Both the position numbers and the translations under genes were made by a program. DNA of 64,000 nucleotides, from NCBI GenBank assembly GCA_051294905.1, contig CM119378.1, positions 9,672,001-9,736,000 of the forward strand, written 5' to 3'. The stretch comes from Botryllus schlosseri. Taxonomy: Eukaryota. Shown here one piece after another: positions 10 through 50,077 of this stretch. The notes beneath the pieces are model-generated. The model ran no database searches, was not told the origin of the DNA, and saw only the letters and a program-made list of their open reading frames with translations. The first letter of the stretch is position 1. Every line of letters begins with the position of its first letter.

Positions 10-3958
<3,949 letters not shown>

Positions 3959-4968
3959 AATGCTTGATTATCAAATCCACCAATTCCCAAAGAAATATAC
4001 AACCGTAACCTGCTGAATAAACCCAGGAATATAGTTCTCAAGGTAAACCACACTTGGTATGTCAATAAAAGCACATTACTCTCAACGGGCTAACAACGCG
4101 CTGCCCTCCTGAATTATACACTGAGACACGCACAGTCACTGCAGGTATGCGTGCATTATGATTCTACCTTGACGTACTCCAGGCTATATTCCGGCACTTA
4201 TCGACCCCCTACTTTAGCAGCGGCGTTGATGGCACATATTCGTCGGGTTATCAGTAAATATCACACTACCCAGAACACATTACCCGTGATCATAATCGGA
4301 GCACGGCAAAGGTTTAGATACCGCGTCGACACTTATCACGATTTTCTTTATCTATTACAGCAAATGGAATTCATCAACAGAACGACATAATGGCAATCAT
4401 GGTTTATTTTGTTTTGTACTCAGTGATCCATGACATTGCAATTTAGGATATTGTTCTTCTGCACGTCTCCGTGACCGTGAGCTTATAAGCATTACGAATA
4501 TAGTCCGAGATTTACTTGCTCATTTACATAGAATTGCGCATATCCCGGTTAGATGTCCAGGAAAATTCAACGATTTTGTCACCTCGGAATCAGAAGCGCA
4601 TAGAAAACACCCGCGCCCTTGTCGTTGAACTACCATGTGATAAGCATGAATTAGGCTACATGAAAACACGTCGGTCGATCAAGTATGCCCGAACACAACT
4701 GTAGGACAGTATTTCGAAGGCTATCCGACAATCGTCGAGCATGTTCAGTGTCTACATTCCAGTCGAAATATAAGCAGTTTCTGTCGAATCAATACTTGAC
4801 AAGAAGCCAACCCTGGATATTGCAGGACCGCGATTAGAAATTGACTTCACCTACCGACACGTCACATTCGTTTGGACTAATTGTTATTGGATGTAATCTT
4901 TTACTTTTCATTGAGTGCGCGCAGTACATACCCCATGCTTTCTAAAGCAAGGTGGGAGTCTGATTAAG

Positions 4969-5726
4969 TAGGGGCTATGGATTACCATATTTTGGAATCA
5001 GAAAAGGGGGACACTTTTACCAAATTATAAAAAGTTAGTTGACGGAAATTGAAACAGCTTATTTTGAAATATTTAGTCAAAATCATGTTGTGTTGACTTA
5101 TAGACGTGTGCGCTGATATGACATCCAGCTTACGCAATCGCCGGTATTGCTCTGTATAGATTTTGAACGTGTTTCATAAGAAGAGAGAGATGACGAGATT
5201 TCCAACTATAATTATTCGGATTATGCGTTCTAGCTCTCTGCGAAGTTTCAATAAGGCTGTTACTTCGCGATAAGGATAGTAATTTCGTTATCGCAGTCGA
5301 GTATGTATAATTCCGCGAACCCTAGCCCAGCCTAGACAAAAAAAGGTCATCACTCCGACTCGAACGTCCGCATTACGTTATTCGCGTCATTTATGGCGAT
5401 TTTCAGTAGACCCTGTCCATTGACCTGGCCGTCAAAGCTGTGAAGGAGGACGAATTTCCAAATAGAAATTTAAGCGTCCCATGAGGAAATTTTCGATTTC
5501 TTTAGAATGGAGGACAAATCCTCCATATGGTTACCATCATGAAACACGTTCAAAATCTATACAGAGCAATACGGGCTTTTGCGTAAGCTGGATATCATAT
5601 CAGCGTACACCTCTATAATTCAACGTAACAAGATGTCCAGTAAATATTTCAAAATCAGTTGTAAACTAACTTTTATGAGTTGATGAATGTGTCCTCGTTT
5701 CCCGATTCCAAAATATGGTAACCCTG
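4969..5726. mobile_element. Foldback element with ~200-bp inverted arms, ~1 kb upstream of the myosin ATG
   Basis: About 4981-5177 is the reverse complement of about 5539-5726; GATTAAG flanks both ends; end resembles CAGGGTTACCATA. Confidence 0.75.
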
Positions 5727-8639
5727 GATTAAGAGCATACCCTCAAGTCGTTTCGACACCCTCCTCACTTTTCATTTCATCAAAATATATATATTTTTTA
5801 ATTGACTAAATTATAATTAATTGGTGAATTGAAGCAGTATATTGTCCTCGAACGAAATGTCCGCAATGATACGTAGATATTTACAACTTGATCCTTCCAA
5901 ATTTGTTATCGACCTACCAAAATATATTTTATCCATAGATTGGGAGGGGTAGGCACTGAGCTATATCGCCACTGGGCTCTAGCCTATCGCCCTGATGAAA
6001 ATTCCATCCCATCCTTAACGTCACGCGATGGCGAAATAGAGCAGTGTGTGCATAGAAAACATCAAGGAATCTTCCGCGATCCATCCGTTCCATGGTTCAG
6101 TGGTTGACAAAGATTCACCTCTATCTCATCATTCACTAAGTAAATAGAGTACATTACTGCTTATAACATAGAAATGATACGTTCAATTCTGTAAGGCTTT
6201 CAAGTAGCAAAGAAACCGTAAAGCAGGCAGATCGGGCGACGATTACCGAGTAATTATGGTGCCGCCGCAGTTTAGCTGACAAGATCGATGTGATTTTCGC
6301 TGTTTGGACCTCGTTTTCGCGTCGATTTTGTAAGGTATAGGTTAATTGGGAATACGACCAAACATGGCGGTGCCAGATAATCGATATCTGTTGGCTTATC
6401 TATTGCAAGACGTGGTTATATATTCTGACGAGTTGGCTAGGGGGAATATCACCACGGTTCCGACGAACAATGATATGTACGCGATAGCTTTCAGAGTTGT
6501 AGAAATCTCCAGTATTTGGTTCTATCGTAGCACCATGCATAATTCCGTGATTTCGTTAGATTGTTATTCGACAAAGTTATAAAAATAATTAAGACAGATA
6601 AATTAAGGTAGTACTGAATAGACTTCTACGAAGAGCAGGATATGTGATATCTTATTGCCTTACCCAACATCACGTCCTCATCCAGGATTTCATTTTATCA
6701 TTTCGCGACATTACAAGACTACGCTACTTTAAACTTACATAGAGCGGTCTAAACAACTGAGGGGTGACATTGAAAAGAATCGATTCAAACGATTGTATAT
6801 ATAAACCTTGATAGAGTTTAACGAAGTTCATGTCGTGGCATCATCACTAAAACCTTGGGGATTGATGAGCTAGAACGATACGTACGTCGTACATCTCATT
6901 CCTAAGAGTAACAAGTTGTGTAATTGCTCTATGTAACGAGACAGTGCACCTGCCTTTGTAGAGTTGTACGCGGGATGATATGCGTCGAACGATTCCCGAG
7001 TATACTGTGAATGCGAAATGGCTTAAATTATTCATGCACCCATCACAAATAGCGATCACAACAGCCGTCAGCGTAAGACTGCAACGGTAGGTTTACCTGG
7101 TACGCAAGTTACAACAGAGACTGATCGTTTTCAGTGTGAATCGACAAAATGTTAGATCTAGGTGGCAAGAAAAAGGTGCGTGATTTACGTTAGTAATATG
7201 CGTATTCCGTGGCGATTCAAGCATAGGCTATCAGAGACGAGAAACTAGAATACACGCAGTACTCTAAACTATAGGCTATGCTGGTCGGTTTGGAAATATA
7301 TCGGCGTAGTGAGAATTCCTGTCGTGCCAATATATGGTTGAATTGGAAACTGGCACTAATTATTCTCAGTGACAGCATTTTGTCAGGACTACACAATGAC
7401 AATACTAACCCATCTCGGCCACCCCCTCACGTTTTATCATCAATTCACCAATTCTGTAATTTCAATGTTTCTCAAGGGTTCAGTAACCGTGTTGGGCATC
7501 CTTTCAAGCATAAGATCCGTTATTAAAAATAAAAGTATAATCCCAAACGATATTTAAGATCATTGAGGCTACAATATCTCTTTTAACAGATGTATGGCAA
7601 TCAGCGTAGCGGAACAGACATAGTCGTCTCATATTGTGTCACGTTATGTTTGTGAAGAGGGCGACTCGAATATTTGAAGCGTGATGGCAAAACAAATATC
7701 TTAAGCTCGCACTTTTACGGAAAGCAGGAATTCACAGAAACGTAACCTTACGTCTTCTGCAAATCATACGGTAGCTGTACCCAGGATTCGGTTAGCGTCG
7801 AAGTTCTCGTAGGTGTTCGATAATAACAATACATTACATGCAAAAAATTTCTGCATCATGGTTCCACATATGCCTTTCCGGTTGCTATACAAGTGTACTG
7901 TACGTGTATATTGTTTTGATCTATTATGTTACGACGTCCGGACGTCCGCAGACACTGGTCGATGGTCATTGCTCAATTGGTCATATTAGTTATGCCCATC
8001 GAGCGTAAAATACGCATTATTAGTATATAATGTCCAATTTCTTTCCGCAGGGCCTAATTTGCCCCGGTATTTTGTAATAACAGTGGACATTACACTATAT
8101 TTAACAAGAGATACCAAGATTCAAATCATACTTTACGACTACATCTATCTTGCCATCGTTGTGGGAATATGTAAGCATGCTTTTCTCATCAGTAGGGGTC
8201 TCTTTCTCATATCGTATTCTATCAACTGTACCAGTTCGACATACGTTGATCCTTGATGGTATATCGTAATCGTGTATTAAATTAACCATTTTAATCGCCA
8301 ATCACCATATATGGTCTGCACGCACACAAAGAATTATGTCAATAGCGTCAAAATCCCCAGTTCTCATTATGAAATAACATAACAAAATTTTGTAGTATAA
8401 CATAAACTGAGAAATGATAAATCTCGTTGGTTGCGATTTTGAGTTACAGCGCGATTTAAGGAAGCGTAGGCTACATAATCAGCAATATTTGGTTTTGCAA
8501 CGAACTGCGCCCATTTGGTCACTGCATCTTCATAAAAGCAGTCATATTGCTGGCCCGCCATAGGCACTTCTCACGTTGCAGCTTAATGTAAATATGCTTT
8601 TAAAATACAGATGCTTAAAACATGGCCATTAGTTTAGTC

Positions 8640-8902
8640 CAGTGGTTCCCAACCTTTTTCGACCCATCGCCCCCTTTTAAAGGTCAACACCGGTCAACGC
8701 CCCCCAAATTTTGTGTACCGAAAATTGGGCATACAAACTGTAATCACCGGCGGGTTGACTAAAAATAAAAAGGTCAAATTTTCGGATCGATGTCTAATTT
8801 GACATACTTTTGTAACGAAATTTCCGTGGGTTGACTAAAAAAAAAAAGGTCAGCCGATTTGACGCGTCATCGCCCCCCTATCGCCCACGTTGGGAACCAC
8901 TG
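8640..8902. mobile_element. hAT (Charlie-like) MITE
   Basis: TIR CAGTGGTTCCCAAC..GTTGGGAACCACTG; perfect TSD GTTTAGTC; subterminal ATCGCCCC repeats. Confidence 0.9.
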
Positions 8903-10894
8903 GTTTAGTCGTTTTTAGCCATGACATCGAAAATATGAAAAATCATATTTTTGGTTGATTGGTATTCATGTGCTCGTTATGGAATGTTCGAAAGTTATAC
9001 CATACTTGTATTCAAGAAATATTTTTTCGTGATCAAATCGTAAATATGTCTAAATGTACCACGGTACACTGACTTGTATTGAGCACTACTTGTTTGGCCC
9101 TTTCGCGCGCTATCTTTAGTGTGATTCATAAACTGGACATCTTGCTTTGTGACGTGATTTGCCAAATCAAGCGGAATGTATTTTCAGAATGTGTCATAAT
9201 GATAATTTTACTGCGACCGCAGGCGTTTGGTTGGTTTGAGTTATACGAGTCAAGTCACCAAATGTGACCATGTTCGCATTGGGGGACAAAACAAATGTGT
9301 CAGGGCAGATATTCGTAACATTCGACCATGAGGTGCTCAAATGTCATAAATTTCATTTTCAATTTCAATAATAACTGACGTCGTCACGGGAACAAAAATG
9401 GATTCACCCCTCCCCCTAAAGAAATCTAACGGCGCGAATTGTTGATCTGTAACAATGCTTTCACTACGTCGAGATAAATCCATGACGTAACCTCACTGCA
9501 GAAAAACATTCACCAAGTGATTTACTGATAGAATATTCGTTATAAAACGTATGATATACCCTTTGTCGTCGAAGTTCCATGTCTACTTCCATACTACCCC
9601 TGTTTCTAGTGCAAGCATTCATGCAATATTTCCCTTCGATAAGGGGTAGGTGTAGCCTATTCACCCGTTTTACGTTACATCATTTTTTACAACATTGCTA
9701 AAATGAAACATTTTGAGCCGGTGTGTTCCAAATCACGTTTTTTAAAATTTGCCATTCCCTAGTCACGATTATATATAGTCTACAGCTCCGCGGAATGAAA
9801 AGAACATTGATTTCTTGCAAGCCACAAAACGCAAGCTATGATAAAAATAATCGTTGGTTATCCATTCCATGAGGTTTACACGCAGCAGCTGGCCAACGTA
9901 TAAAATTCATTGTGATGTGACATATCAATATATGGCTATTATGCGCCTGTTAGATATTGTATGCATGTATATTTATATCTGTTCGGTGTAATTTTTGAAT
10001 GGACGACAGAACGACCGTAATGCGGACTGCGGACTGTTCATTTCAAGTATGGTCTTTCCCGGAAAGTAAATCCAAGACTGTGCCACATATGTGGCTCCCA
10101 CTCGTACGATGCATGTATGGTACAAAACAAATCCATTAGCGATTCATTGATTACTTTTAATGACTGATCGATAGAGAAATCAATTCTGAAGGACAAAATC
10201 CTATGTATACATAGTTGGGCGAAACCGAATAGTAGTTCACTTGAAAGTTTATTGATCGGTATTAATCAGTGAGATTGCATGCACGCGGTACAGTTAGTAA
10301 GTTATATTTATCATCACTTTTGAAAGCCGCACGAACACCTACGAGTCAATGGCCATTGCCTTAATGCTTGTCAGTTTGCGATTACCGTCCGTGGGATTAG
10401 TTATTTTTAAAAGAGCTTCTTGTGAACTCATTTTCCTCAAATGCGCCCTGAAATATTTATAAACGATCGAAGAGTTCGGTCGTTCAAGTCGTGATTGATA
10501 AATTTCAAGTCCTTCAAATCAATAAAACGACGACCGCCGATCGATGGCTTACTCATGTCCCGTAACGTAGAAGTTACCGACTAGCCGTTTGAGATACAGA
10601 ATCGATATTTTCTTGGGGCAATTAGGACGATATATATTAATGCCTTATCAAAATCCAATACGCAACGAAAAGTATCAAAATAAGCTAATTAAATCTGAAG
10701 TTCACCATGTGGCATTCACCATATGCCTCATATTTTCAGTGAAAACTGATGTGATGCTATAACATCCATAACAATCCATGTAGTATGATTTGGTTATGAG
10801 GTGGTGTCAGTATTACTTGTCGTGGCCACAGCCCACATATCCAGTTTCCCTTGCGCAGATTCGTTTTGTGATCTCGTAGTGATAATCTCGTTAG

Positions 10895-11417
10895 TAGGGC
10901 TGGGCATAATGATTCGAGTACTCGAATCTGAATCGAGCAGTAATTTTAATGATTCGAGTCGAGTAGTAAAATACGATTTTTTCGAGTACTGAAATTATAC
11001 GCTCCTCGCCGCTGAAAGTTATTTTATCAACAAGAATTATAGTTTCGATACTAATTTTCACAGACGAAGCCTTGGAACCTTGACTGGTCGTACCGTAGCA
11101 TACAATACATATAGTACAAAGCTACAAACGTAACTGGGAATAACGGATTTCTGAAGTCATGATCATTCCACAACATTGCCACTCAGTGAATTGAAATCAG
11201 TGTGGTCCAAAAAATACCTAGCTATCTTTAATATAATGGATAACGTACATTATATTCTTTGTGGTGGCATAAAAGGTAGATATTTGTACTTTGAGATAGG
11301 CCTACTATATTCGGTTATGACGTCATAATAAGTGATACTCGATTACTCGACTCGACTCGAAGCAAAATGCGTGATTCAGAATCGAATCACCCGGGTACTC
11401 GATTTTGCCCAGCCCTA
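10895..11417. mobile_element. hAT-type MITE
   Basis: TIR TAGGGCTGGGCA..TGCCCAGCCCTA; perfect TSD CTCGTTAG; subterminal TCGAGT/ACTCGA repeats. Confidence 0.9.
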
Positions 11418-11862
11418 CTCGTTAGTACTTCGTGCATTGGCGAGCGAGTTGAATTGGAATATGAAGTACTCATTGTTACTAAATAATTTCTGAACACGTG
11501 TCTCTGAGAACCTAGTATTGTAGTGGTCGGGAACCTTTTTTGTCTAAAGAGCCATACTGGCACTATTTTTTTCCATTTTAACTGCCGAGAGCCATACATG
11601 CCAATCAACAGTTGCGTCATAATTGATATTCCATGACGTCATGGTAGCACTAATTCGAACTACATGGGATTCGTCGTGTGCGCCACATTGTCTCTGTAAA
11701 AACTCGTACTAATCAAAGCTTGAACTTTAAACTTGAATTCCGAGAACGTAGGTTCGTCGTTATGCTCCTTTAAATGCGAGAATCCATGATCACATGCGTA
11801 GGTGGAGCAAAATATGTTCCCTACAGCAGTATATATCCATAACCACTGTAAGCTGTGATACG

Positions 11863-13221
11863 CAGGCCGTGTTATTTTTGGCATATGCCAAAACTGCCAA
11901 AAATAACTTATTTTTGGCATTTTTCGATTTTTATTTTTGGCAGTTTTGGCATCGTCCTCTAAATAGATAGTTTCAGCCTCGAATTAGTCACAAAAACGCT
12001 TTATTTGGGCTAGTTTGTCAAAAGACACCACAAAATGTGCAGCATCCACGTATAATCAGTGCCAACAAACAATAAGAAGAAGAAAAAAACTAACGATTTC
12101 ATAGGGTAATAATATCAAACGAAACCACAAAATGTGCAGTATCCATCGGAATCGGTGCCAATAAGCAAAAAAAAAGAAAGAAAAGCCTAACAAACACGCT
12201 CAACAGCTGATTGTTACAGCTGTTGAATAGACTTAAATCGTTTGCACTGTAACAGTGCTTCCAAACTCAGGTCAGCTAAGTTTCTCCTAAATTTTTTTCT
12301 CGCCCAGCGAATCTGGGAAATATCGGCTTCAACAGTAGCCGTTGAGGGAAAGAATGTTGCCAGTCATCCACAAAAGGTTTTCAGAGCTTCAAAATCATTG
12401 GAGGGCCGAACCGGCTTCCATGCATCATGAAAAGAGATCACTTCGCCAGTGCCATCGATCTTATCGCGGAAAGAATTTTCTTCCCGATCCTTTTCCAGGA
12501 GTTTCCTGTGTTGTCTCTCAACACATTCTATTTAGTAGCCCGACTATCATTTCCCCATCAGTCTACCGATATATTTTCGGAGGACTTTTGTCACTTCAGG
12601 TGGCTTTAATATTACCAACTCGCATGGAAGAGTCCTGGGAAAGTTAGCTTGTTTAAGAACATTGACGCAACAAGACTGTCTGGCAAAACGAGACTATGCA
12701 GCTCAGAAATAGCCAGACAGTTTGTTGCGTCACAATGTTCAACTCGATCGCAATGCAAAAATTGTGGTTGATTTTGGGGATTCCAGTTCCATGAGCAGAA
12801 TATAATTTAGATTTTAATAATCAGTACTGCGGCAGCTTCTCATTGATACCCGTTTTATCAAATTTAGTGCCCGACAAGCCGGTCAAAAATGGTTGTAAAA
12901 TTGCCTTTCGACAAATGGAAAGTATGACGTAAACCAAATGCAGTCAGCCGTTCAATATCGCTGTGCCCACACCATTTAGGACACCATGCTTTCCCCCCTA
13001 ATGGGTGGGCTGGACCCAGATTAAGAAACCTGCCTTTCACAAACGCTCTTCTCGCTTGTAACGAGGTCCTGCTAACACAACACCATGAACGAAATACACT
13101 ATTTGGCAGGCCGTGTTATTTTTGGCATATGCCAAAAATTGCTTATTTTTGGCATTTTCAAATTTTTATTTTTGGCAGTTTTGGCATCTGGCTCCTGAAA
13201 TGCCAAAAATAACACGGCCTG
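11863..13221. mobile_element. hAT deletion derivative carrying a transposase remnant
   Basis: TIR CAGGCCGTGTTATTTTTGGCAT; perfect TSD GTGATACG; the left arm is repeated internally at 13107. Confidence 0.85.
12214..12660 (-). pseudogene. Decayed hAT-like transposase C-terminus
   Basis: Hand translation ..LPCELVILKP..DAWKPV..LKTFCG*LATFFPSTATVEADISQIRWARKKFRRNLADLSLEALLQCKRF; several in-frame stops; resembles the hAT C-terminal S/T-x-V-E-x-x-F-S region. Confidence 0.7.
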
Positions 13222-13635
13222 GTGATACGTCAGTCACGTCGGGTCAGGGTCAGTACCACACCTGTCGTCAGGATGAGTGAACGAAAATTCTGAAACGTTC
13301 CAGTACTATATTGGCATTTTCTATCGATGTTCAGTTCATGGATGCCAAGATTTTAAAGATTTTTTCTCCCAAAATCACACAATTTGTATATTTATTGTTC
13401 GAAGATAAAGCGCGAAACGAGAGGTAGGTCTGAGGCAGCACAGACGAGCCAAGCCTCACCAATGGTAACGCAATTCATCGTAAATAGCTTAGAATTTATT
13501 ATAACTTATATTCATCATCATCATTGGTTTATTAGCAATTTTATCAGTTCAATACACCACAAAAATGCGATACAATGAATAGACAGAAGCGACTAGGAGT
13601 AATCTATGGAATCAGACAACCACCTTGGCCTAGGC

Positions 13636-15186
13636 CAGTGGTTCCCAACCGGGGAGGAATTCCCCCCTTGGGGGGAATTTTGCAATTTTTAGGGAGGAAT
13701 TCCACTTTAGAATTGGATTTCCTAAATTGTTCATGTCCGAACTGTCATGTAGTCAACCAGTTATATCCGAAAGTATGCTCCTTATGTTTTTTTTGTTTGC
13801 TGAAAGTATATGTTCAAACGCTATTTGAAACCTCTTTTTCACATACAAATTCCCCCTCCCCCCCCCACCCCCACCCCCATTTTTTAAAATTAGTTCAGAT
13901 GTGCTGCAGTTCGCAAGACAATTTTGTAGGCCAGCGACGGCCTCTCAATCAAATATATCCTAAGCGAGCAAATGTCGTGCCGTATCTATCACAACAGGGC
14001 CTCTAGTGAAAGTATTTATCTTATATTTTCAAGTTAACATTTTCAGACAGTGACAAAATATTCTAACGTCATCCATTCAAGTCAAAGAGATCGCTAGCCT
14101 TGTTTTATTTTTAGTGAGCAGCTACCCGATCGAAAAAATACATGGTAAACTTGGTGCAATGTTGCCGAAACGCAATGGGTGTCCTAAATTTCAATGAGCT
14201 CCAGCAGGGTATCTGATCACGTGTATGTTATATATCAACGCTGTAACCAAATCACGAGGCTCCGAGTCACGAGTCCATCTCACTTTCATAGTTTTTACTC
14301 GAGTCAAGTCGAGTCATTTTCAATTCATCATTGAGTCAAGTCCGAGTCCAAGTCACCGAGCAGAGGGTCGAGTCCGAGTCAGTGTATTATGTCTCGAGTC
14401 CGAGTCCAAGTCACACTCCAGTCAACACTGTTTGGTGATATTGAATGATTTGGATTTATGATATAATAATTTTCCTCACTTTGAGCAGTTTCTTGTCCCA
14501 TTGTCAAATAGCAGGATCAATAGGCGAAATTCCAATAGGGTGGTCACACTGGTCACTTTACTGTTCTTCGAAATTACAATGAAATGTCGGTCTTGGCCGT
14601 CTTATAGTCTCAAATCATATGGCTTGGTTCGAGTCATGAACAATGACTCGAGTCCAAGTCGAGTCAATACCCAGATTGTCTCGAGTCGAGTCGCTTCCGT
14701 ATTTTGAGAAAATGACTCGAGTCGAGTCGACTCATCAGAAAATGGTGACTCGAGTCAGACTCTAGTCTGGTCAACCCTCCTATATATGAAAGTACCAATA
14801 TTATTGGCCAAATGCATACGCAAACTTGAGAAAAAAATCGCAAGACCAGTAAATTTATGCATAGTGATTTTTCACAACAGTTATATTAGCGATTGGTGCA
14901 TGGTAAGCCGAAAACACAAATGGAAGTGTGGGGGTTTGTTGAGTCAAGCCTTCCAGAATTTGTTTGATTGGGACCAAGATCATTGTTTTTGGAGGTCTAC
15001 AAAGTGTTATTACAGCACTGCTAGAAACAAACACTCGGTACCGCCCGTCTTATTCTCTCAGTCAACAGGTGTTTGCGCGGTAAAAATGACCTTTTTCAAT
15101 CATCGGGCAGATTTATCCTAAGGGGGGAATTTTGGCTTAAATTTCAGCCAAGGGAGGCACGAGATGAAAAAGGTTGGGAACCACTG
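13636..15186. mobile_element. hAT (Charlie-like) MITE inserted in the LINE-tail element
   Basis: TIR CAGTGGTTCCCAACC..GGTTGGGAACCACTG; perfect TSD GCCTAGGC; empty site visible near 50418-50425. Confidence 0.92.
14236..14779. mobile_element. Same GACTCGA-rich hAT family, older inverted copy
   Basis: Degenerate TIRs; TSD TTATATAT/CTATATAT; interior is the reverse complement of 2987-3539. Confidence 0.8.
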
Positions 15187-38898: not shown

Positions 38899-41800
38899 CT
38901 ACATCGGCGGCACCTCCAGACTCTTCCCCACCCCGTTCTAAAACAAAAGAACACAGTCAAAATTACTGTTGCCACTTACATGCTCGAAAGTGGATAAAAT
39001 GACCGTTGACCATGTGTGAGCACAATAGCGCCATCCAGATAACAAAGGCATATCTTCAAGCAACAGTTAAGATCAGAACAACATAACACAAAAGTATAGA
39101 CAAAAGAGCATCACATTTATGATCATTCGGCTTCGTTTTTATGCAGAAGTACATATAGATTCAGTAAATGCAGTTTTACACAATGCAGTTTTACACAATA
39201 GAGTACTGCGTTGAGCTGTCTTACTCGGGAAGTTCTAACATGAGCTTCTTCAAACACTTCACCATTAAAGGTCCTTACACCTTGTAAGTAGGCCTACTGC
39301 CCGTGATCAATACCTCATGTCAACATACTGTCAAAATATCGCATGATACTGAAACAGCATCCTTCCAGGATCTAGCCAGGGATCACAACCAGAAGAAAAA
39401 TCATCATGTATGGTAACCCCAATTGGAAAATGCTGCTAGGAAATTAGCAATGTACATTATTACGGAATAGCCTACATGTTTGAAAAAAATATTTGCAGGG
39501 AATTCCATTTTGCCGTGTGCTTCCGCTCGCGGATCATTTCGCGGACAGCCAAAAAAATTGTCAAGATCAGGTTTTGCAATTTTATTTTGTGTAACGTAGT
39601 GGAAACATTTTACCGATTTGCAGTAGGCAGACAGTTTACTTGTGCGAGTAACTACATCGACAACTGACTTCTCTCTGTGGAAATTGTTCTGTTGATTTAA
39701 GTTCCAAAGACGCACATACAGACATGACGGGTTAATCATAGGTGTCTTAGATTTGGGTTTTGTCATTTTCTATTGTGACAATTGGTCATACGCAAACTGT
39801 GTTGCATACAATTTGCCGACCCCAATAAGCGTGGTAACCCACTTGACATATCAAAATTGATCTGTTATATACTGTTTAAATAGAAAACGAATGTCGAAGA
39901 CGCCCATTGAAATCATGTTTCATCCATCATAACACAGAAGATAAAAGTAAAAGAAGATGATTATAATTTATTCATTAAAAACTCGAGTGTGTTTCGGAAT
40001 GGAAAGAATCGGATCGGAGTTAAAGGAATTACAGAAAAATCCAAATCCGTAGTGGTCATTTAAATGTACATTGGCTATTCATATCATCACATGCATCTAC
40101 CACATCACGACAAGAGCCATATTTGGTGAGCAGGGAGCATGGCTGTTTTAAATAACTTACCATATACTCAATTACGCGAGCGGGATACGGAATTCCGCCG
40201 AGCTCTTCGCATTTCTTCATGTGAATTCTGGCCGGGTCTCCAGCCACAAGCACCGGCTTCTCCGGGTCAGCGGGAGCCAGATTGCGATGACTGTCCATGA
40301 GATCTTGCATCCTGTCTTCGAAGCCGTCGCCAAACATGGCGGGATTGACCGCGATGAAGCATTGGCCCTGAAAGATGGATGGGACATTTTAACTCCATTA
40401 CAATTCACTACGCAACGTGCATTAGAGTGTGGACGCTGAAAGCTAGCAGACCGAGCGGTATTGCGCCCGGGTGAACATTGGGCTCTCCAGAAACATGCTT
40501 AGTCTGCCGGTAGAGGTTGTCAAAATAGCACTACACAAGTCTTTAGACTATTTCCACTTCTATGCTTACTTGAGTATTTCTCACATCTTCATTTTCTACA
40601 TTTACTTGATGTAATTTTGACATGTATTTGAAATTCCCATTCATACTTGTATTTGGGCAGAAACTTGCAGCATTATATCTACTTCTTTACTCGAGTAGCA
40701 ACGCAAACCACTTTGAATTCCTCCGCATACAGCAGCTTTGAGTGAGCGATACAAATCCACAGTGGAAACTTGGGTCGGGACGACATAGGGGAGAGGAGGC
40801 CAAGATGAGACACGGGGCAAGATGAGACATGCAATTTTTTCACAGAAAAATTTTCTGATGGACAGATTCCTTCAACTATGTTGTTCCCATAATATCATTC
40901 CATAGCCCTACCATATTAACAAGGCAAACAGATTTGAGATTGGGCAGAAAAATGCCAAAAAATATATTTTCATAGCCTATGTCAGTTATGTGAATTCATG
41001 TTTGTAAGGGCATACCTATCATAGTACTTGATATTATAGAACAAGAATACTGGAGCTGGTTGAGTGCAATATTAGCAGTGTAATCATGCGCTTACCTCTG
41101 AAAAGTAACGGACAGAAATGTTTTTATTCGAATTTATATGTTAATTTAGGTGTGGGGGTAAGATGAGACAAAATCATGGGGGTAAGATGAGACATGGGTA
41201 TCAGAGGGCTTTTCTATTGAAGGCCTCGGAAGATTAAAAATTTACTGTTGAAGGCACACAAAATGTATTATTTATCTAGTAGTTTACCAGATGCGATATT
41301 ACCAGACAAAATAATACCGAAACTCTCATTGTTGCTGGATCCCATGGTTAATTGGTTTTCGATGTCATTTATATGTGTATATGATGTACAAATTCTTTTC
41401 AAAAATGACTAATTTCATGATTATTATATTTTATTCACGATGTTGCTGGTTGATTCATCATTTGGGATGAATTGGTGGTGTAATGAGCAAGAATTGCTTG
41501 GTGTCTCATCTTAAACACAGTGTGTCTCATCTTACCCTCACCTGGGGGTAAGTTGAGACATTTGAGCAAGGATTTTTGAGGGCCAAGAAATCCATCAGTA
41601 TGTTGTTCAATATAACTCAAGCCACTGTCATGGAAAGTAGAGATCGCAGGCTTTCCATTGGTACCAAAATTAATCCTCAGAAGCCATTACTCTTTGAGTG
41701 GCCTTGAATTATCAGAAAAGTGTCTCATCTTGGCCTCCTCTTGCCTACCCACATACAAGACACGATCAGAAAAAACGTTACAGAGCCTCACCAAATCAGC

Positions 41801-44800
41801 AGTTTCTCCGGTCGTGCCCCATTTTCGAATGTTCATGCTGTAATTGCTGCCTCCCAAAATCCCGCAGAGAACCTCGACCATCATAGCTAACCCGTAACCT
41901 GATAAAAACAATTAACACTATTTCCACGCGCAACAAAAAGCCACTCAACCAATCACCTTTGTACCCCGAAGTCTCCTCGGAACCGCCCAGAGGCAACATA
42001 CCACCACCGTCCAGGACAGCTTGTGGGTCGTTCGTCACCTTGCCTTCCTTGTCGGCACCCCAACCGTCAGGAATGGGAATTCCTTTTCTAAAATGATTTT
42101 GTTCGCATGATAAAGTATAATTTGGAATGAGTCGCATATCTGACATGTAGCTATGACTAATTATGGAACGAAACTGATCACTTCTGACCAGGCCTCCGTG
42201 CCCGGCTGAGGATGTGGCAGGTAGTGGCTAATCCCGTAGAAGTAGCAACAGAAGGAACACAGAAAAATTCTAGTGAATTGGAAGTAGAAGTAGCAATTTT
42301 CAAGACATACCGAAACTGCAGGTGCACCGAAGTAATTGCAAAATGCAGATTTCGTCAATGGGTCGAATACTTTTAGCAGTTGATCGGGGGGTGGTTACTT
42401 TAGAAATCGTAGGGTTATCTTTGTGACATATGCAGAATCACTAATGACTAGGGCGATTTTTTTGGAAATGTAAAAATTTTGTCAGAATTGAAGCGTTAGG
42501 TCGAAAAATTGTCGAAATTGTTTACAAAGTCTGAAGTTTTTTGACTCGTGCATTTTATTTGTACCGCAGATTTTGCACTGTCGGTGAACTTATCATTTGA
42601 TATTTTACAGCTTGTAGCCTACTTTATAGGCGTACCGTTGTAGACGGCCCAGTGTCTGCTCAGTGTGAATCATAAATGGTCAAATGAAACCAAATAGATT
42701 GACGCGGTGTTAATGGTCAACGTACCGCAATATCCTAACTGAAGAAAGACTGCTTGGGCATTGCATGGTTCTTATATCAAGAAGCGCATGATGAAAAATT
42801 GTGATGTAGACAGCATTGTCAGAATGAAGCAACAAGGTGTGTCACCAGCAGTGTACGTACAACTTCAGTGTTGCCGGTCAACAACTACTACGGCTGCTGA
42901 ACGTTCTTCCTCCATTCTTGGCAAGCTACTAAGTAAGGACAGACACTTTCTACCCGAGAATGTAGGAAAGTATCTTTCGTTGTAATACAACAAACTTTAA
43001 TTATTTCTACCATAATACGCGAATACCGGAATTCTTCATAGGGACAGATTTCGATAAAATAAAGTTTTTTCGCGTAAAAATTTGTCAGTTTTCAAGTCAA
43101 AAACGTTTTTTCAGACCAAATACTTCGGACAGTTCTAACAAGGACAAGGACAGACAGTTCCAAACAGAAATGAAGATAAGTAGCACAATTTTAATACCCA
43201 ATTTGCATAGGTGAGGTCAAATTAATTTAAAATTTTGATTTTTCAGGTCAAAATCTTCTGTTTTTAGGTCAAAAAAATCGCCCGACTAATGACACTACAA
43301 ATTAGGTGCAATTTACAAAAATTCATCCAGTTAACGTTACCGTCATACAGATTCTATTTCGGTGAGTGGTGACCATAATATAATTCGAAACATGCTTTCT
43401 ACTTTGCAAACTTCAACGAGTAGAAAGTAAGTGGTTTTATCAAGAAAAAGTTGAAGAAGTCCAAGACACAACCTTGTGAGGAAGTACGGTAGTAGGCAAA
43501 ACCTAATTGAGTACTCATAATAAGTAAAAGTACTTTGTTACTAACAACCTCTGAAAACTTCATACGCTAATATTAATTAGGGAGTTGAAAAGAATTCCAA
43601 AATAACAACTACCCATAAAACATGCGATGAGCAGTGAGCACACACTAAACAATGAATTACATAGAATGTCAATGAGATGAAAAATACAACCCATGCCACC
43701 ATTTCATTCCAGTAAAGTACAGTTCATTACGGTGCCAATATTTTAATTGCTCAGATGCAGCAGCCAAGTGTGTATTTGCCTAGCAGCTATGTAGCATTTT
43801 CGATAGAAATTAATTAACCGTGCCATGATCATGACCATAGAAAGCGACGGCAGGTTCGAACCTTGCATTAACTTCAGCTTTCCCAAAAGAGACGGCACTT
43901 GTTGCCATGTCCAGTACAAATGTATCACCATCAACACCAGGGGCAGCACATGCAATTGGGTTCGTACCAAGTCCATAGAACGAAGACCGATTTACCCGTA
44001 CTATGCGACTTGAATTGGTGAAAGAGAAACCCTGAATGTTATTGAGATCATCTCACCTTCCGGAATGATCTCAGAATAAATAAAGCGTGGCAGGACAAGG
44101 CATCAAGCATGAATTCCATAATGCTGGCATAACCGGACGATGATCAGATGGCGTAACGTCTCATATAGGCCTATTCACTGTTGTTGTGACACCACATCAG
44201 TAGATTGAAAGATGATGAATGATGGGAAGAAGATGAGTCTGATGACACCAGTTGAAATATTATGTGAAATCTACTCTACTTGATGATCGTAAGGTCAATT
44301 GCGCAGATGCGTGCAGCATCATCGGCATATATTATTCAAAGAGGAGTTTCTTGTTCAAAATGCGGAATACTGCTGTTGGGGTTCGATAGAGCGGTTACGT
44401 GTACCATGTCAGGATTTTGATTTTTAGATCCAATTCCCAACTACTGATAAATCATGGCACGTCAACGAATTTGAACGAACATGAGATAGACGAGTTTTTG
44501 TGATGCAATTTGGGATAAAGATTTTGGCTTCACAAAAGCAATTCAATAGGACATTGAAATAGAGTTTGGGAATTCTAAATCACAGTTGAATGAAAACATG
44601 AAAATTGAACAAAAATATTTGTCATTAGAAAAACTACCAGAATCTGTTACCCAACTAATCCTTACGAAAGATTTGTAGCTGGATAAACATCGCTAACAAG
44701 ACGTCAACGCAATTTGAAGTGAAACCGTGCAGCTGGTTGCTGTGATCATTATCGAACCAAATACATACGCGACAGTTACTTCTACTGATCTGCTATTTCA

Positions 44801-47800
44801 AACAGCAGCGCGATTCAAATCATCAATTGAGAGCCACAAATCAGCACTTGCTAGTCCCTATGCCGGTACAAGGTTCACCGCAACAACAGGAAGAAATAGG
44901 AAATTAGCAGAGTCGGCTACTCAGAGGTGACATACCGCATAGCTCGCATTGTAGTTCATCAGATGACAATGGCAATATGATATGAGCTGGCGGCGTTAAA
45001 GATGAAAAAAGAGAAACATCTGCCACCAAGCAACGATATTTGTTAATTACAGCAAATTTCACCATGAGAAATGCGCATTTCAGAGATATACCAGTCGGCA
45101 TCATCAGATGTTATCTTTCGTAAATTATTTTTATACAATTTCTGCACGATTCATACAAGACCAGGCTAGATCATACCTAGTGAGATAGGCTTTATCAATA
45201 CAAGTTCATATCTAGGCGGGTTCACCACAAACAGCCGGGACTTGATTTAGTAAAAAATCGCCGGAGTCCGGCAATGTCGGAAGATGCAGGTACGCGCTAT
45301 TGTTAAGCATCTTCCCGGTTAGCACCAGAAGTCAACCTTTCATTGATCCGAACTTTGCCGATAGAGACGGTACTGGTCGCCATATCGAGAACAAAGGAAT
45401 CGGCACCTACGGCCGGAGCAGCGAATCCGATAGGATTCGTACCAATCGCGAGCTCCGCAGAACGAGGGGTGAATACCGCAGGAGAAGTGTCGGTAAACGA
45501 CATCCCCTGAAGAAAATTTTGCGATCACACCCTACAAACTATATCTGGTGCCGAGATATCACAATCTTTGTTATACCACTCTGCATCGATGAGTGAAATC
45601 TCAAATCTCGGAATATCTGTCGAGGTTGAAACGTAAAAACTAGCGAAACATTGTCCACATTTGGCACCATCACCATTACCATTACGATACACTGCTTTTT
45701 GAGCAATAGACTTTGCTTCAAAACTGTGGGCCTTACAAATCAATAATTATAGAAATTCAGGAAGTGCTGTTACTAACCATTTAACCATGACTGTAACATT
45801 TTGTACAGACCAGACTCCCATTTAATTTTTTTAAAGCCGAGTAGTGTTAAGGTTGTCTGTAGCAGTAATAAAATTTATCCTCATCGGTTAGTTGAAGTGG
45901 CAAATAGATGGATTGTAATTTCAAGATAGGAAATTGAGAATTCAATGGTAAGTCTTGAATTGCATCGACTTTAGTCTAATTTCAAGTATAACACTAGAAA
46001 TCTAATGGTGAGATTCATTTCACAAACTAAGTCTACAAACTAGGTATGAACTTAAGTTATTTTCCACGTGGGCCAGGATTACCGGTAGATAGATACCACA
46101 TCAAACTTTTACCTATAACTCCATACTACCAATGTTTCAATGTACGCTGGCGTAAGCTTTCAATGACAATAGTTCTAGTGATGAATCTTTATTCAAAAAT
46201 TAAAATATGATGACCTAGTGCTCCAACAAAGTGCATAGATTAAGCTGTAATTTGATTGGCTTGAAAATAAGAGTCAAGGAAAGGTACATTACTAACAAAC
46301 CACAGCACATCACTGCAATCATAAATTTGCGAGTATTACAAACCAATCAAACGAAGGGAATTAACCAAGGCAATATTCGTGTAAGGATGAAGCAGTCACT
46401 ATGGTGAGCGTGCAGTGCATGACTGACCTCTTGTTTAGTTCTATCTTTCCCAAAGCAACGGTAGTTGTCGCCATATCAAGTACGAAGCTGTCATTATTTT
46501 TCGCAGGCGCAGAGAACGAAATCGGATTAGTTCCAAGCGTACACTCTTTAGAACGAGTCGGCAAGACAAGGGGAGACGTGTTGGTAACGCTCATGCCCTG
46601 AGATGAACAAAATTTGAATACAAGTGAAACGGTGCTTAATCAAATCAACAGGAAAAATTCTTTCAGATAATACTTCCTTCCCAAAAGGTAGTTCAACGAG
46701 TTGCTAAAAAATACAGGATTGATTGCTTAACATGAAATTATCGTCTGCAAGAATTAATCCTTCATAAAAGCCTTTGGACTGTGACATTGCTTCACACTAC
46801 CGTCGCTTTACAATTGCCAGAAGGCAGATCTAGTTATAATCTGGTGATTCAGAGCATACCTTTTGCCTTAATGCCATGATAAGTCTTAATACTTTGTTGT
46901 ACAAAATCCTACTTGATATTCACAAAAACAGGTTTGACAGACGTCTTCTAGACACCAAGCACAAATTATTTTTAGGTGGGGCCCGTCATAAGCAAAACGT
47001 CATATAAAATTTCCTACCTTAGAGAGTATGTGTCGCAAACACCAAGAGTATTTAGTATACCGTTGAAACAAACCTGTGTCACTGTATATATCCAAATTCA
47101 AGTAAGCCCTACTAAACAACCTCATTCTGTAAGGAATATATCATTTTCCGTCTGTATAAAACAAATTGATAAATCAACTTCCTTATTTTAGCAAGCAGAT
47201 ATCCAAGAACTAGTCTCATCACATCTCCATATTTGATGAAGAGTATAGCGAGCTCGAGCATACAGATTAAATTAATAGGTCCACAGAAGACATACCAATG
47301 TACATTCTGTCTGGGGTTAAATAGTTTCAATCTTGGTGATAACAGACATGGAATCCTTTGTAAAATACATGAACGTTTAAATTGATGGCGATGGCTCCAG
47401 CGGTGACCTAGTTGTGATTCAGAGGACAATTTCAGCAGCAGCACTAACATCATGTATCTTCTACTATGAAAAATTTTGACAATTGGTTTCAGAAACAGTT
47501 GAGAACTTACCACTAAGCCTTGACTGGAGGCCTGTAATGCATAGTAGCCAGCGATCCCATAGTGATTGGATCCTTTGGCAACGACCCATCCAACTCCACT
47601 TTCTTTGGCTTTCTGAAGTCAACAAGACAAACTTATGTTACGTCTTCTCCATACAGACCAACTGAATGAAAATATCCTAATAGCAAGGACACAGACAATA
47701 CCTTGATAGCAAGGTCCATGCAAAATTTACCGACTACAGGACCCAGACCATTGCGACCGTCAACATGAGCGGTAGCGGCGGATTCTTTTAAAATTGCAGG

Positions 47801-50077
47801 CTTAATGTGGCCATCGGCTATGCTTTGCTTCAAATCGTTGACATACATCTCTGAAACATAGCTCGGTTTATAAATTAGTCCATGTCAATAGCCAGCACTG
47901 TCACCAATTAGAAAAATAGGAATTTACCAAGCTGCACTCTATGTGCAATTTGAAAATGAGATTGGTTCTTCTTTCTTTCCTGTTTGCCATAAGCTTGAAA
48001 ATGAATAAAACTAGATCTGTATACCTTCCAAATGACACAGTCAGGTCAGATCAAGTAACAAGTTGGCATGGTATGGAAGTATGGCATGGCATGGAACGAA
48101 ATTTCGGTATGGAATATGGAAAAGTGCAAGTATGATATGGTATGGAAATTTCCCAAGTATGGTATGGGACGTGTTTTCCATACTTCCATACTTTTTCCAT
48201 ACTTTGACAGTTTTGCCAGAACCATGACAATAATCTTACTTTTGATTTGTCCAATTGATTGCATACCACCGAAAATCGCTCACTGTCTATGTTCATATCT
48301 CATATTGTGACTCACCCATCCCGGTCGACATATATTTGAAGACAATAATATCTATTCTCTAATATTTATTTTCTCATTTGCAATTCAGCAATTCGTATTA
48401 TCAGTGCCTCCAATTAGCGAGAATCGATTGGACAGCGGCACGCGATCTCCCTCATAGGTTGTTATTTATTCGTGTGCAAAATGAGGTGGTAGGTGTGATT
48501 GAAATCACCTGATTCGTTAAAATAAAAGTTCATATGTATATGTATAGCAACATGTATTCACGGGAGATCGTGGAATCGCTAATTGATAGCATAGCCGTAC
48601 TCGTTACTAATGAATAACATATTTCTTACTGCTCGAGTTATAGTGGCGTGCGACAGTGTAGGTCATGGCGGCTTCTACCATACGCATAAGTTTATTAACA
48701 CCAGGAAGTCGCTCTGACCCATGCAATATATTCGGCATTTACACATGTAAATTGATGCTACCTTTGTACATTTGGAAAAATTTCAAACCCTTCCTATTTC
48801 TCTGTGGGCTTACCTCATATATCCATTTTACGGAGGCGTCACATTGCATTGTACGGTTATCAGTTCACTGATCATTAATTAAATAGCGTGCTGTTCCATT
48901 CTGGGGGTGTTAACGTTCACCAATAGCAAGTCTTACCAAATTTTATTGGAGAAGCAGTTTAAAGTATATAAAGGTTGGGAACCTATCTTATAATTTGACA
49001 ATACATTTTTTTATGTAATTCTGTATATGAGGTTACTGCTAGCAGTACGTTACCACACTAGATTTACATGTCATGAGATTCTGTTGCGATTTCTTGATAA
49101 TCCCGTGTGTATAGGCCTATATTATATGTTTCTACATTGCTGACGACATATGATATAAAGAAACTGGGGATATCGTTGATGCATCGGGGCTGTTTAAACG
49201 GATAATCTCATCCAAAACAATTATAATATAAACGCCGGAACATTTCCTCACATCAAAAATAGAATATCACTTGGGATGTTGGTCAAGTTGCGAAAGTATG
49301 GAAATATTATCAAATATGGTATGGAAGAATGTTGCTATGGTATGGAAAATGGTCAAGTATGGTATGGAACGATTGGGCGGGTAAGTAGTATGGAAGATTC
49401 CCATTCCATTCCATACCATACCATGCCCTTCAAACATAAGTATGTTTCACAAGTACTAGATTGCTATTCAAGGTGTGCAGCAATCAACAAAACAAATTTT
49501 CTTAACAGAAAATATTTAGTCCAGGGTACCATACCTAGTCTGTTCATCCCGTGGCTGTAATGTCCTCTGTGATCTGCCATGATCAGCGTCTCTGCCATCT
49601 GGTCTGAATGTGCAGGCAAGGCTCCGGCAGCAGTGATGCATCTCGAAACAAACTGCTTTGCCGCAGCGATTGTCACTGTCTTTGTGGCACTGAAGTGAAG
49701 AAAGGAACAGATGCGACTAGACTAGGGCTGCCAGAAGTGCAGGTGGTAACTTTTCCCATCCACTCAATCAAGCTCACTAGTAAAGATTTCAAATTATTTT
49801 CGAATATCCTGCACATTCACAGTCGACTCAGACATATCAATCGAAGTAACATCGCAATCACATTTATCCCTATCAGTTAAAACCTGAACAGAATGGTCTT
49901 TGGTTCAATAACGAAGTGCCGAATTACATAGGCCCGGCGTAACGTAAGTAATTCGCCGATTTATCAAGTACCAGACAACCAGAAATACAATGTAATGTTT
50001 GTAAAACGACGATTGTAAAGCAACAATATCTTTAATTTCACGATAAGTAAAGACATAGGATTCGCTTACCTCTCCAT
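38899..50077 (-). CDS. Type-2 malate/L-lactate dehydrogenase family oxidoreductase (Ldh_2; AllD/ComC/YiaK/YjmC-like), 355 aa, with triplicated exon 5
   Basis: Exons 50070-50077 (ATG GAG AG), 49535-49689 (..[14 protein letters not shown]), 47702-47850 (..[12 protein letters not shown]..), 47511-47612 (..[11 protein letters not shown]..), one of 46428-46597 / 45337-45506 / 43862-44031 (GTNPI..DMAT), 41957-42087 ([19 protein letters not shown]), 41792-41898 ([17 protein letters not shown]), 40161-40367 ([16 protein letters not shown]), 38899-38937 ([15 protein letters not shown]). Family motifs occur in the correct order and phases are consistent. Confidence 0.93.
40788..41745. mobile_element. 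TA-flanked (Tc1/mariner-pogo-like) MITE in Ldh_2 intron 7
   Basis: About 26-bp TIR GG(GG/CA)AGAGGAGGCCAAGATGAGACAC flanked by TA on both sides; internal GGGTAAGATGAGACA repeats in both orientations. Confidence 0.8.
42449..43285 (+). mobile_element. hAT-type deletion derivative in the Ldh_2 intron after exon 5c
   Basis: TIR TAGGGCGATTTTTTT..AAAAAAATCGCCCGA; perfect TSD CTAATGAC. Confidence 0.88.
42761..43000 (+). pseudogene. Decayed hAT-like transposase C-terminus (second lineage)
   Basis: ..[51 protein letters not shown]; T-x-x-x-E-R-S-(F)-S-like motif; lies inside a TSD-flanked element. Confidence 0.7.
43862..44031 (-). CDS. Ldh_2 alternative exon 5c
   Basis: 170 nt, phase 0 to 2, cag|GGT..AG|gttcga; [56 protein letters not shown](R). 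Not recognisable in the supplied ORF track; decoded by hand. Confidence 0.85.
45337..45506 (-). CDS. Ldh_2 alternative exon 5b
   Basis: 170 nt, phase 0 to 2, cag|GGG..AG|gttgac; [56 protein letters not shown](R). Confidence 0.9.
46428..46597 (-). CDS. Ldh_2 alternative exon 5a
   Basis: 170 nt, phase 0 to 2, cag|GGC..AG|gtcagt; [56 protein letters not shown](R). Confidence 0.92.
46783..46810 (-). promoter_or_regulatory. Candidate intronic RNA docking site for exon-5 selection
   Basis: Pre-mRNA UAAAGCGACGGUAGUGUGAAGCAAUGUC is complementary to segments at 45832-45857, 44081-44093 and 43841-43853. Function is inferred only. Confidence 0.4.
48061..49430. mobile_element. TATGG-rich element with mirrored ~145-bp arms in Ldh_2 intron 2
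   Basis: GGCATGGTATGG.. at the left end, ..CCATACCATGCC at the right; the two TATGG/CCATA clusters mirror each other; no clean TSD. Confidence 0.6.

What the first reader, a model, noticed from the sequence alone, without database searches (positions are those of the whole stretch)
43862..46597. Three mutually exclusive active-site exons in an Ldh_2-family dehydrogenase
Seen: exon 5 occurs three times in tandem (46428-46597, 45337-45506, 43862-44031). Each copy is exactly 170 nt, phase 0 to 2, has AG/GT boundaries and has no stops or indels, although the copies are only about 53-61% identical in protein (hand count 35/57, 32/57, 30/57). All other exons are single copy. Because 170 mod 3 = 2, including none, two or all three copies shifts the frame; only one at a time works. 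Established: GTNP and DMAT(S) are conserved cofactor/active-site motifs of the AllD/ComC/YiaK/DpkA family, whose members differ in substrate. The segment before GTNP differs sharply (NTSPLVLPT vs DTSPAVFTP vs NSSRIVRVN). Inference: one gene makes three enzymes with swappable catalytic-pocket modules and possibly different substrates. I know of no description of this for this family.
Basis: partly seen in the sequence, partly recalled or inferred. Interest (0 to 1): 0.92.

Follow-up and report, generated by a model that had tools for sequence, protein, structure and literature searches.

The report
Three swappable active-site exons, one dehydrogenase
A sea-squirt-type gene for a dehydrogenase of unknown substrate carries three alternative versions of the exon that builds part of its catalytic pocket and uses one per transcript; this is real and conserved, but it is a familiar kind of splicing and related species already have it in automatic annotation.

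Summary
A nine-exon, minus-strand Ldh_2 (PF02615) gene at window 50077-38899 encodes 355 aa. Its exon 5 occurs three times in tandem: 5A 46597-46428, 5B 45506-45337, 5C 44031-43862. Each copy is 170 nt, has AG/GT boundaries and is open. All other exons are single copy. Only single inclusion gives a full reading frame.

The copies are not relics.
- Synonymous sites are saturated against a relative that is 88% identical in protein, yet that relative keeps a B-type exon at 77% amino-acid identity.
- Styela clava has the same three 170-nt exons, and RefSeq models three 355-aa isoforms that differ only there.
- Ciona intestinalis has two such isoforms.

RNA evidence:
- 5A is joined to exons 4 and 6 at high depth in two runs.
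- 5B sits in RNA contigs at about 10% of 5A depth.
- 5C is the only copy covered in one raw-read run.
- Junctions for 5B and 5C were not seen directly.

By alignment to E. coli AllD, the exon carries first-shell substrate residues plus invariant cofactor residues. Different substrates remain inference.

I found no paper on this. It is a new member of a known kind (mutually exclusive exons from tandem duplication). The scan also noted this stretch once more (docking-site idea), which I could not support.

The parts
50070..50077 (-). exon 1, coding part: ATG GAG AG followed by GT
   Evidence: It completes the N-terminus M-E-S, as in relative P0167.
49535..49689 (-). exon 2 (carries the SHG motif, the AllD Ser43/His44 equivalent)
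   Evidence: (Ldh_2 profile 2-47).
47702..47850 (-). exon 3
47511..47612 (-). exon 4 (carries SNHYG, the AllD His116 equivalent); its donor joins to exon 5
   Evidence: One search shows the joint 47510/46596 at depth 378 and 277.
46428..46597 (-). exon 5A, the canonical variant, closest to the single exon of other animals
   Evidence: 138 of 141 homologues resemble A most; joints to exons 4 and 6 in X1 and X2, and 2 reads in X20.
45337..45506 (-). exon 5B, variant with the signature FTD...F-T-P-R-S and Val at position 33
   Evidence: RNA contigs at depth about 41 (X1) and 28 (X2) with empty flanking intron bins in X1. B-type exon in a relative, 77% identical.
43862..44031 (-). exon 5C, variant with the signature GFSFTNS...R-V-N-R-S
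   Evidence: X22 covers 5C but not 5A or 5B. X5 holds 0.42 of the words; same signature in Styela X2 and X3.
41957..42087 (-). exon 6; its acceptor receives exon 5
   Evidence: joint 42087/46428.
41792..41898 (-). exon 7
   Evidence: joint 41896/41955.
40161..40367 (-). exon 8
   Evidence: Ldh_2 profile 263-331.
38899..38937 (-). exon 9, coding part ending in the stop codon
   Evidence: total CDS 1068 nt.
45177..45336 (-). possible extension of exon 5B to an alternative donor (CTAG|GTATGA); it holds an in-frame stop
   Evidence: X2 contig record 10 covers 45178-45507 at even depth; sequence; stop at codon 206.

Best explanation
This is a cluster of three mutually exclusive exons made by tandem duplication of exon 5 of an animal Ldh_2-family (YjmC-like) NAD(P)-dependent oxidoreductase. 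One copy is spliced into each productive mRNA. Because each copy is 170 nt (two over a multiple of three), transcripts with none, two or three copies hit an early stop and should be removed by nonsense-mediated decay. The three mRNAs encode 355-aa enzymes that share everything except a 57-residue segment. That segment keeps the cofactor-binding motifs GTNP and DMAT and an Arg at position 15. It changes the residues next to them, including the equivalents of AllD's substrate-shell Ser140/Asp141 and a loop at positions 10-20. 5A is the ancestral, widely used form. 5B is a minor form. 5C is used in a restricted set of samples. Shown: the anatomy, the frame logic, conservation under purifying selection, 5A junctions, and the presence of 5B and 5C in RNA. 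Inferred: strict one-at-a-time use of 5B and 5C, removal of wrong combinations by decay, and any difference in catalytic properties.
For: Anatomy and frame. Each copy is an Ldh_2 segment in its own right. RNA: contigs join exon 4 > 5A > 6 > 7 at depth 378 (X1) and 277 (X2). 5B contigs have depth about 41 and 28, while the neighbouring intron bins in X1 are 0. In raw-read run X22, 5C has about the same depth as exons 6-7 while 5A and 5B have none. In X20, 2 reads join 5A to exon 6. RNA run X5 holds 0.42 of the words of 5C plus 120-nt flanks, where an exon-only holder would give about 0.37. Conservation: against transcript L002 (88% protein identity) pS is 0.79, which is saturated, and dN is 0.07. 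The relative still has a B-type exon ORF at 77% identity, with another Ldh_2-like ORF 1485 nt downstream; the spacing here is 1475 nt. The Styela clava locus L001 has three 170-nt AG/GT exons in the same place. RefSeq isoforms XP_039253951, XP_039253952 and XP_039253953 differ only there, and Ciona LOC100183774 X1 and X2 likewise. 5C matches Styela X3 at 37/56 and X2 at 35/56, as well as 5A matches X1 at 37/56. Active-site mapping.
Against: No read or contig was listed that crosses exon 4 > 5B, exon 4 > 5C, 5B > exon 6 or 5C > exon 6. The tool lists a joint only from three reads, and I had a single read-laying run. The 5C evidence rests on about four or five reads in one run and on a word share in another. 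In run X2 the 5B signal continues 159 nt into the intron, to a possible alternative donor, and that form carries a stop codon; part of 5B use may therefore be unproductive. The samples are coded, so tissue or stage is unknown. No biochemical data exist for any animal member.
Confidence: 0.8

Rival explanations
1. The three isoforms use the same substrate. The swap changes cofactor preference (NADH versus NADPH), dimer contacts, kinetics or stability instead.
For: In AllD, Phe147 lies in the adenine environment at the subunit interface, and Thr156, Pro158 and Asp174 hold the cofactor. Phe147 corresponds to position 14 of the variable loop. The canonical Lys at position 33 is Val or Ile in all B- and C-type exons. 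All Styela isoforms rank the NCBIfam subfamilies in the same order.
Against: The equivalents of the AllD substrate-shell pair also vary: Thr-Ser in A and B; Ser-Ser, Ser-Thr or Thr-Thr in C types. The AllD paper says these positions differ between family members with different substrates.
Confidence: 0.3
2. Only 5A makes enzyme. 5B and 5C are included mainly to make unproductive transcripts that lower expression, or they are decaying duplicates.
For: 5A dominates in three of four runs. In X2 the 5B contig runs on into the intron and would carry a stop. 5B and 5C have weaker donor sites and 5C has a poor pyrimidine tract.
Against: A poison exon needs no protein conservation. Yet both copies keep frame, length, GTNP, DMAT and Arg15 across species whose synonymous sites are saturated. 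Single inclusion of either gives a full 355-aa ORF. RefSeq models coding isoforms for the Styela counterparts. X22 covers 5C only.
Confidence: 0.07
3. The extra copies are an assembly artefact.
For: None found.
Against: The copies differ at about 40% of nucleotides, so they cannot be collapsed or expanded copies of one exon. The same arrangement is present in an independent Styela clava assembly and in a relative's contig. RNA runs hold 5B and 5C.
Confidence: 0.01

Closest known systems
Styela clava putative oxidoreductase YjmC isoforms X1-X3 (XP_039253951, XP_039253952, XP_039253953) and Ciona intestinalis LOC100183774 isoforms X1/X2
   Same: Orthologous gene. The same exon is duplicated with the same 170-nt length and phase in Styela. 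Isoforms of equal length differ only in this segment.
   Different: These are automatic gene models, not a described finding. Styela's two non-canonical exons are both C-like, whereas this organism has one B-type and one C-type. Ciona has two variants on record.
Mutually exclusive exon pairs in metabolic enzymes, such as ketohexokinase exons 3A/3C and pyruvate kinase M exons 9/10 (from my own knowledge, not tested here)
   Same: Tandem homologous exons of equal length give isoenzymes that differ in a substrate- or effector-binding segment.
   Different: Those are vertebrate pairs with measured kinetic differences. Here there are three copies, the family is different, and there is no biochemistry.
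Dscam1, 14-3-3 zeta and Mhc-type clusters controlled by a docking site and selector RNA pairing (from my own knowledge)
   Same: A cluster of alternative exons from which one is chosen.
   Different: I found no conserved intron element shared with Styela. The best candidate pairing was not beyond chance once the number of windows tried is counted. Here the reading frame alone can enforce exclusivity.
Ldh_2 enzymes with solved structures: P. horikoshii 1v9n, M. jannaschii sulfolactate dehydrogenase 2x06, E. coli AllD 4h8a/1xrh, DpkA 2cwh, YiaK 1s20
   Same: Same fold family. A close relative of the window protein matches 1v9n at E 6e-76, and the conserved His, GTNP and DMAT residues are present.
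   Different: No characterised subfamily cut-off is reached. Arg at exon position 15 is Gly in AllD and 1v9n. Those enzymes are prokaryotic and have no introns.
Lingula anatina LOC106159668 isoforms X1/X2 and the Mya arenaria MDH-like gene
   Same: The same enzyme family, with a tandem duplication of the exon that encodes GTNP to DMAT.
   Different: The duplicated exon is shorter (99 nt in Lingula) and a multiple of three, so the frame does not enforce exclusivity. The boundaries differ, so these look like independent duplications. The Mya model reads through both copies.

Membership tests
Pfam Ldh_2 (PF02615) oxidoreductases | Profile match above the gathering score | tested here: met
   each exon-5 copy alone scores 52-70 bits against a cut-off of 38.8. 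Exon 8 scores 43.8. Exon 2 scores 38.7, just under the cut-off.
Pfam Ldh_2 (PF02615) oxidoreductases | The two invariant histidines (AllD His44 and His116) and the cofactor residues Thr156, Pro158 and Asp174 | tested here: met
   SHG in exon 2, SNHYG in exon 4, and GTNP and DMAT in all three exon-5 copies.
Characterised Ldh_2 subfamilies (sulfolactate dehydrogenase, AllD, YbiC-type, 3-dehydro-L-gulonate 2-dehydrogenase) | NCBIfam equivalog score above the curated cut-off | tested here: not met
   run on relative P0167 and the three Styela isoforms. The best is sulfolactate dehydrogenase at 237-253 bits against a cut-off of 500. All other subfamilies are also below their cut-offs.
Mutually exclusive exon cluster from tandem exon duplication | Adjacent homologous exons of equal length and phase, each with its own splice sites | tested here: met
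Mutually exclusive exon cluster from tandem exon duplication | Each variant is found in spliced RNA, one per molecule | tested here: inconclusive
   5A junctions are shown. 5B and 5C are present in RNA without flanking intron signal (5B in X1, 5C in X22), but their junctions were not listed. No record joined two copies.
Mutually exclusive exon cluster from tandem exon duplication | Every variant is kept by purifying selection | tested here: met
   the B type is 77% identical in a relative with saturated synonymous sites. The C-type signature is shared with Styela. Between copies pN is about 0.3 against pS of about 0.7-0.8.
Docking-site and selector control (Dscam type) | One conserved intron element complementary to an element beside each variant | tested here: not met
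   no intron block is shared with Styela (best E 0.4); the best window, 47408-47385, pairs with both inner introns, but 3 and 4 of 100 shuffles do as well, and it was picked from about 150 windows. This was a light test only.

The most novel reading that the evidence does not exclude
The three exon-5 modules give one gene three isoenzymes with different substrate or cofactor specificity, switched between tissues or stages (5A to 5C, as run X22 hints). The same pocket-forming exon has also been duplicated independently in ascidians, a brachiopod and a bivalve, which would point to repeated selection for diversity at this pocket in an animal enzyme whose substrate is still unknown.
Probability: 0.35. 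Interest if true: 0.65.

Novelty: new member of a known kind. Interest (0 to 1): 0.45.

Why it matters
Animal Ldh_2 (YjmC-like) enzymes are widespread, from nematodes to fishes, but have no assigned substrate. A conserved set of alternative pocket modules marks the residues that evolution varies on purpose. It also gives three natural variants to compare in one assay, which could help find the substrate. The cluster is a clean case where exon length alone makes inclusion one-at-a-time. The gene also seems prone to duplicating this exon in separate phyla. As a type of gene architecture it is not new.

Tried and rejected
1. Finding this organism's own spliced isoforms in the protein collections. 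None is held. The closest is 88% identical, and isoforms collapse into 90% clusters.
2. Fetching DNA for the relative's contig that carries the B-type exon. No DNA was served, so dN/dS for 5B between species could not be computed; only amino-acid identity is available.
3. Ciona genomic locus and the first Mya protein: not on record.
4. Intron conservation with Styela: nothing.
The lighter window scan gave nothing beyond chance.
6. The 14-nt direct repeat at 46622-46635 and 44717-44730 as a selector: 13 of 100 shuffles give as many matches.
7. Rfam on the high-depth intron stretch: no match.
8. Literature: no paper on this cluster. The term 'YjmC' mostly matched a journal code.
9. I did not run structure prediction. 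The tools return no coordinates, so residue distances to the ligand could not be measured.
Full report
**Observation**

- On the minus strand, 46597-46428 (5A), 45506-45337 (5B) and 44031-43862 (5C) are each 170 nt. Each follows an AG, precedes a GT, and is open in the same frame with no indels.
- Nucleotide identity is only 0.56-0.61.
- Each copy alone matches Pfam Ldh_2 above the gathering score, at the same profile positions 132-185.

**Gene model**

Reading the minus strand with splice sites and homologues gives nine coding exons: 50077-50070, 49689-49535, 47850-47702, 47612-47511, exon 5 in three versions, 42087-41957, 41898-41792, 40367-40161 and 38937-38899.
- With any single exon 5 the CDS is 1068 nt and encodes 355 aa.
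- With none, two or three copies the frame breaks and a stop appears between codons 145 and 228.
- A tblastn of the full protein against the window finds every other exon once.

**RNA in this organism**

I had one read-laying run, used on two contig runs and two raw-read runs.
- In X1 and X2, contigs join exon 4 to 5A, 5A to exon 6, and exon 6 to exon 7, at depth 378 and 277.
- In X20, two reads join 5A to exon 6.
- Exon 5B is in RNA contigs at depth about 41 (X1) and 28 (X2), roughly a tenth of 5A.
  - In X1 the bins on both sides of 5B are empty, and intron contigs elsewhere have depth 3-4. This is spliced signal, not pre-mRNA.
  - In X2 the 5B contig runs on for 159 nt at even depth and stops at 45178, next to a plausible donor CTAG|GTATGA. 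That longer form has an in-frame stop. Some 5B use may therefore be unproductive.
- Exon 5C is at intron-level depth in X1 and absent in X2.
- In raw-read run X22 the gene is weakly expressed (four reads cross the exon 6-7 junction). There, 5C has about the same depth as exons 6-7, while 5A and 5B have none.
- A second run search with 5C plus 120-nt flanks found RNA run X5 holding 0.42 of the sampled words. An exon-only holder would give about 0.37.
- The tool did not list junctions for 5B or 5C, because it needs three reads. One-at-a-time use is therefore shown for 5A and only indicated for the others.

**Relatives**

No copy of this organism's own protein is in the collections.
- The closest is P0167, from a transcript contig: 87.6% identical and A-type.
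- The next are ascidian proteins at 64-70%: an unnamed transcript protein P0222 (92% identical to Styela X1), then Styela clava, Phallusia and Ciona.

Cluster listings show the following.
- Styela clava has RefSeq isoforms X1, X2 and X3, all 355 aa, which differ only in the exon-5 segment.
- Ciona intestinalis LOC100183774 has isoforms X1 and X2, both 367 aa, with the same pattern.
- In the Styela genome locus L001 the three exons lie at 7384, 10604 and 12563. Each is 170 nt with AG/GT boundaries, and the canonical one comes first, as here.

**Selection**

- Against the 88% relative, synonymous sites are saturated (pS 0.79) while dN is 0.07. Unconstrained sequence would be scrambled at that distance.
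- Yet a genomic contig of a relative carries a B-type exon ORF (P0276) that is 77% identical to 5B, with the same FTD, IGTNP and [10 protein letters not shown] features. It also has a second Ldh_2-like ORF 1485 nt downstream. The 5B-5C spacing here is 1475 nt.
- 5C shares its signature (GFSFTN, then Arg/Lys-x-Asn-Arg-Ser) with Styela X2 and X3. It matches them at 35-37 of 56, as well as 5A matches Styela X1.
- Between the copies, pN is about 0.3 and pS about 0.7-0.8.
An assembly artefact is excluded by the divergence of the copies and by their presence in independent assemblies.

**History**

- Of 141 full-length homologues, 138 resemble 5A most. 5A is therefore the ancestral form.
- In a tree of the 57-residue segment, A-types group with other animals. 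Our B groups with the relative's B (99/96). Our C groups with Styela X2 and X3 (81/64).
- All non-canonical exons, including Ciona X2, form a weak group (71/67). This suggests that a second exon existed before the split between the Ciona and Styela lineages. With only 57 columns this is tentative.

**What the segment does**

Alignment of P0167 to E. coli AllD is gap-free here. With the AllD paper's numbering, exon position n corresponds to AllD residue n+133. The paper (PMC3527362) reports the following.
- Ser140 and Asp141 are first-shell substrate residues. They are conserved within AllD but vary across the family with substrate.
- Pro158 stacks on the nicotinamide.
- Thr156 and Asp174 are conserved cofactor residues.
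- Phe147 lies in the adenine environment.

These correspond to exon positions 7, 8, 25, 23, 41 and 14.
- In all variants GTNP, DMAT and Arg15 are kept.
- The following vary in a type-specific way, conserved across species: positions 2, 6, 7-9, 12-14, 16-20 and 33 (Lys in canonical exons, Val or Ile in B and C types).
- 'Active-site exon' is therefore fair.
- Whether the change alters substrate, cofactor preference or subunit contacts cannot be told from sequence. No isoform reaches any characterised NCBIfam subfamily, and all rank them alike.

**How exclusivity is enforced**

- The frame rule is shown. Removal of wrong combinations by nonsense-mediated decay is inference.
- I looked for RNA pairing control, which another first-stage note on this stretch proposed.
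  - No intron block is conserved with Styela.
  - The best candidate site, 47408-47385, pairs with both inner introns no better than 3-4% of shuffles, after being picked from about 150 windows.
  - A repeated 14-mer is within chance.
  - I treat this mechanism as unsupported but not excluded.
- 5B and 5C have weaker donor sites than 5A, and 5C has a poor pyrimidine tract. This fits regulated, minority use.

**Wider pattern**

- In Lingula anatina, isoforms X1 and X2 of LOC106159668 differ in a 31-residue stretch. The genome has two tandem 99-nt exons that encode GTNP to DMAT.
- In Mya arenaria, two near-identical copies of the same short exon lie about 450 nt apart, and the deposited model reads through both.
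- The boundaries differ from the ascidian exon, so these look like separate duplications of the same part of the enzyme.

**Novelty**

- Searches for mutually exclusive exons with Ciona or ascidian, for the enzyme name, and for tandem exon duplication at enzyme active sites found no paper on this cluster.
- The isoforms already exist as automatic RefSeq models in two relatives.
- Mutually exclusive exons from tandem duplication are a well-known architecture.
- I therefore class this as a new member of a known kind, of moderate interest. The interest would rise if the isoforms prove to differ in specificity.

Noticed in passing
window 42577-43170 (intron between exon 5C and exon 6): RNA contigs and reads pile up here at depths of 1,000-15,000, from many slightly different contigs (95-99% alike) with many loose ends. 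It looks like a dispersed, highly transcribed repeat. There is one copy in the window and no Rfam match.
   Followed up: partly
window 45177-45336: In run X2 the 5B contig continues 159 nt past the normal donor and stops beside CTAG|GTATGA. This possible long form of 5B keeps the frame but has a stop after 11 codons.
   Followed up: partly
L003 5930-6034 and 6399-6500 (Lingula anatina); L004 4408-4512 and 4862-4960 (Mya arenaria): Separate tandem duplications of a shorter exon that encodes GTNP to DMAT in the same enzyme family. Lingula's pair is used alternatively in RefSeq isoforms X1/X2. The Mya gene model includes both copies.
   Followed up: partly
protein P0036 (Operophtera brumata KOB69503): The gene model contains four tandem copies of the segment that corresponds to exon 8 (NLGQCFIVIDP...). 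This is probably another tandem exon cluster read through by the annotator.
   Followed up: no
proteins P0151-P0158 and P0005: Double-length (570-790 aa) Ldh_2 proteins in horseshoe crab, oysters, Lepidoptera and others. They are either fused tandem genes or merged gene models.
   Followed up: no
window 48040-48300 and 49270-49440 (introns): Related repeat stretches with short tandem units (GTATGGAA-rich) that give long spurious ORFs on both strands.
   Followed up: no
window 46039-46053 with 45168-45181 and 45202-45215: One 14-15 nt site in the 5A-5B intron is complementary (93%) to two sites just downstream of 5B. One of these overlaps the candidate alternative donor. Significance was not tested.
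   Followed up: no
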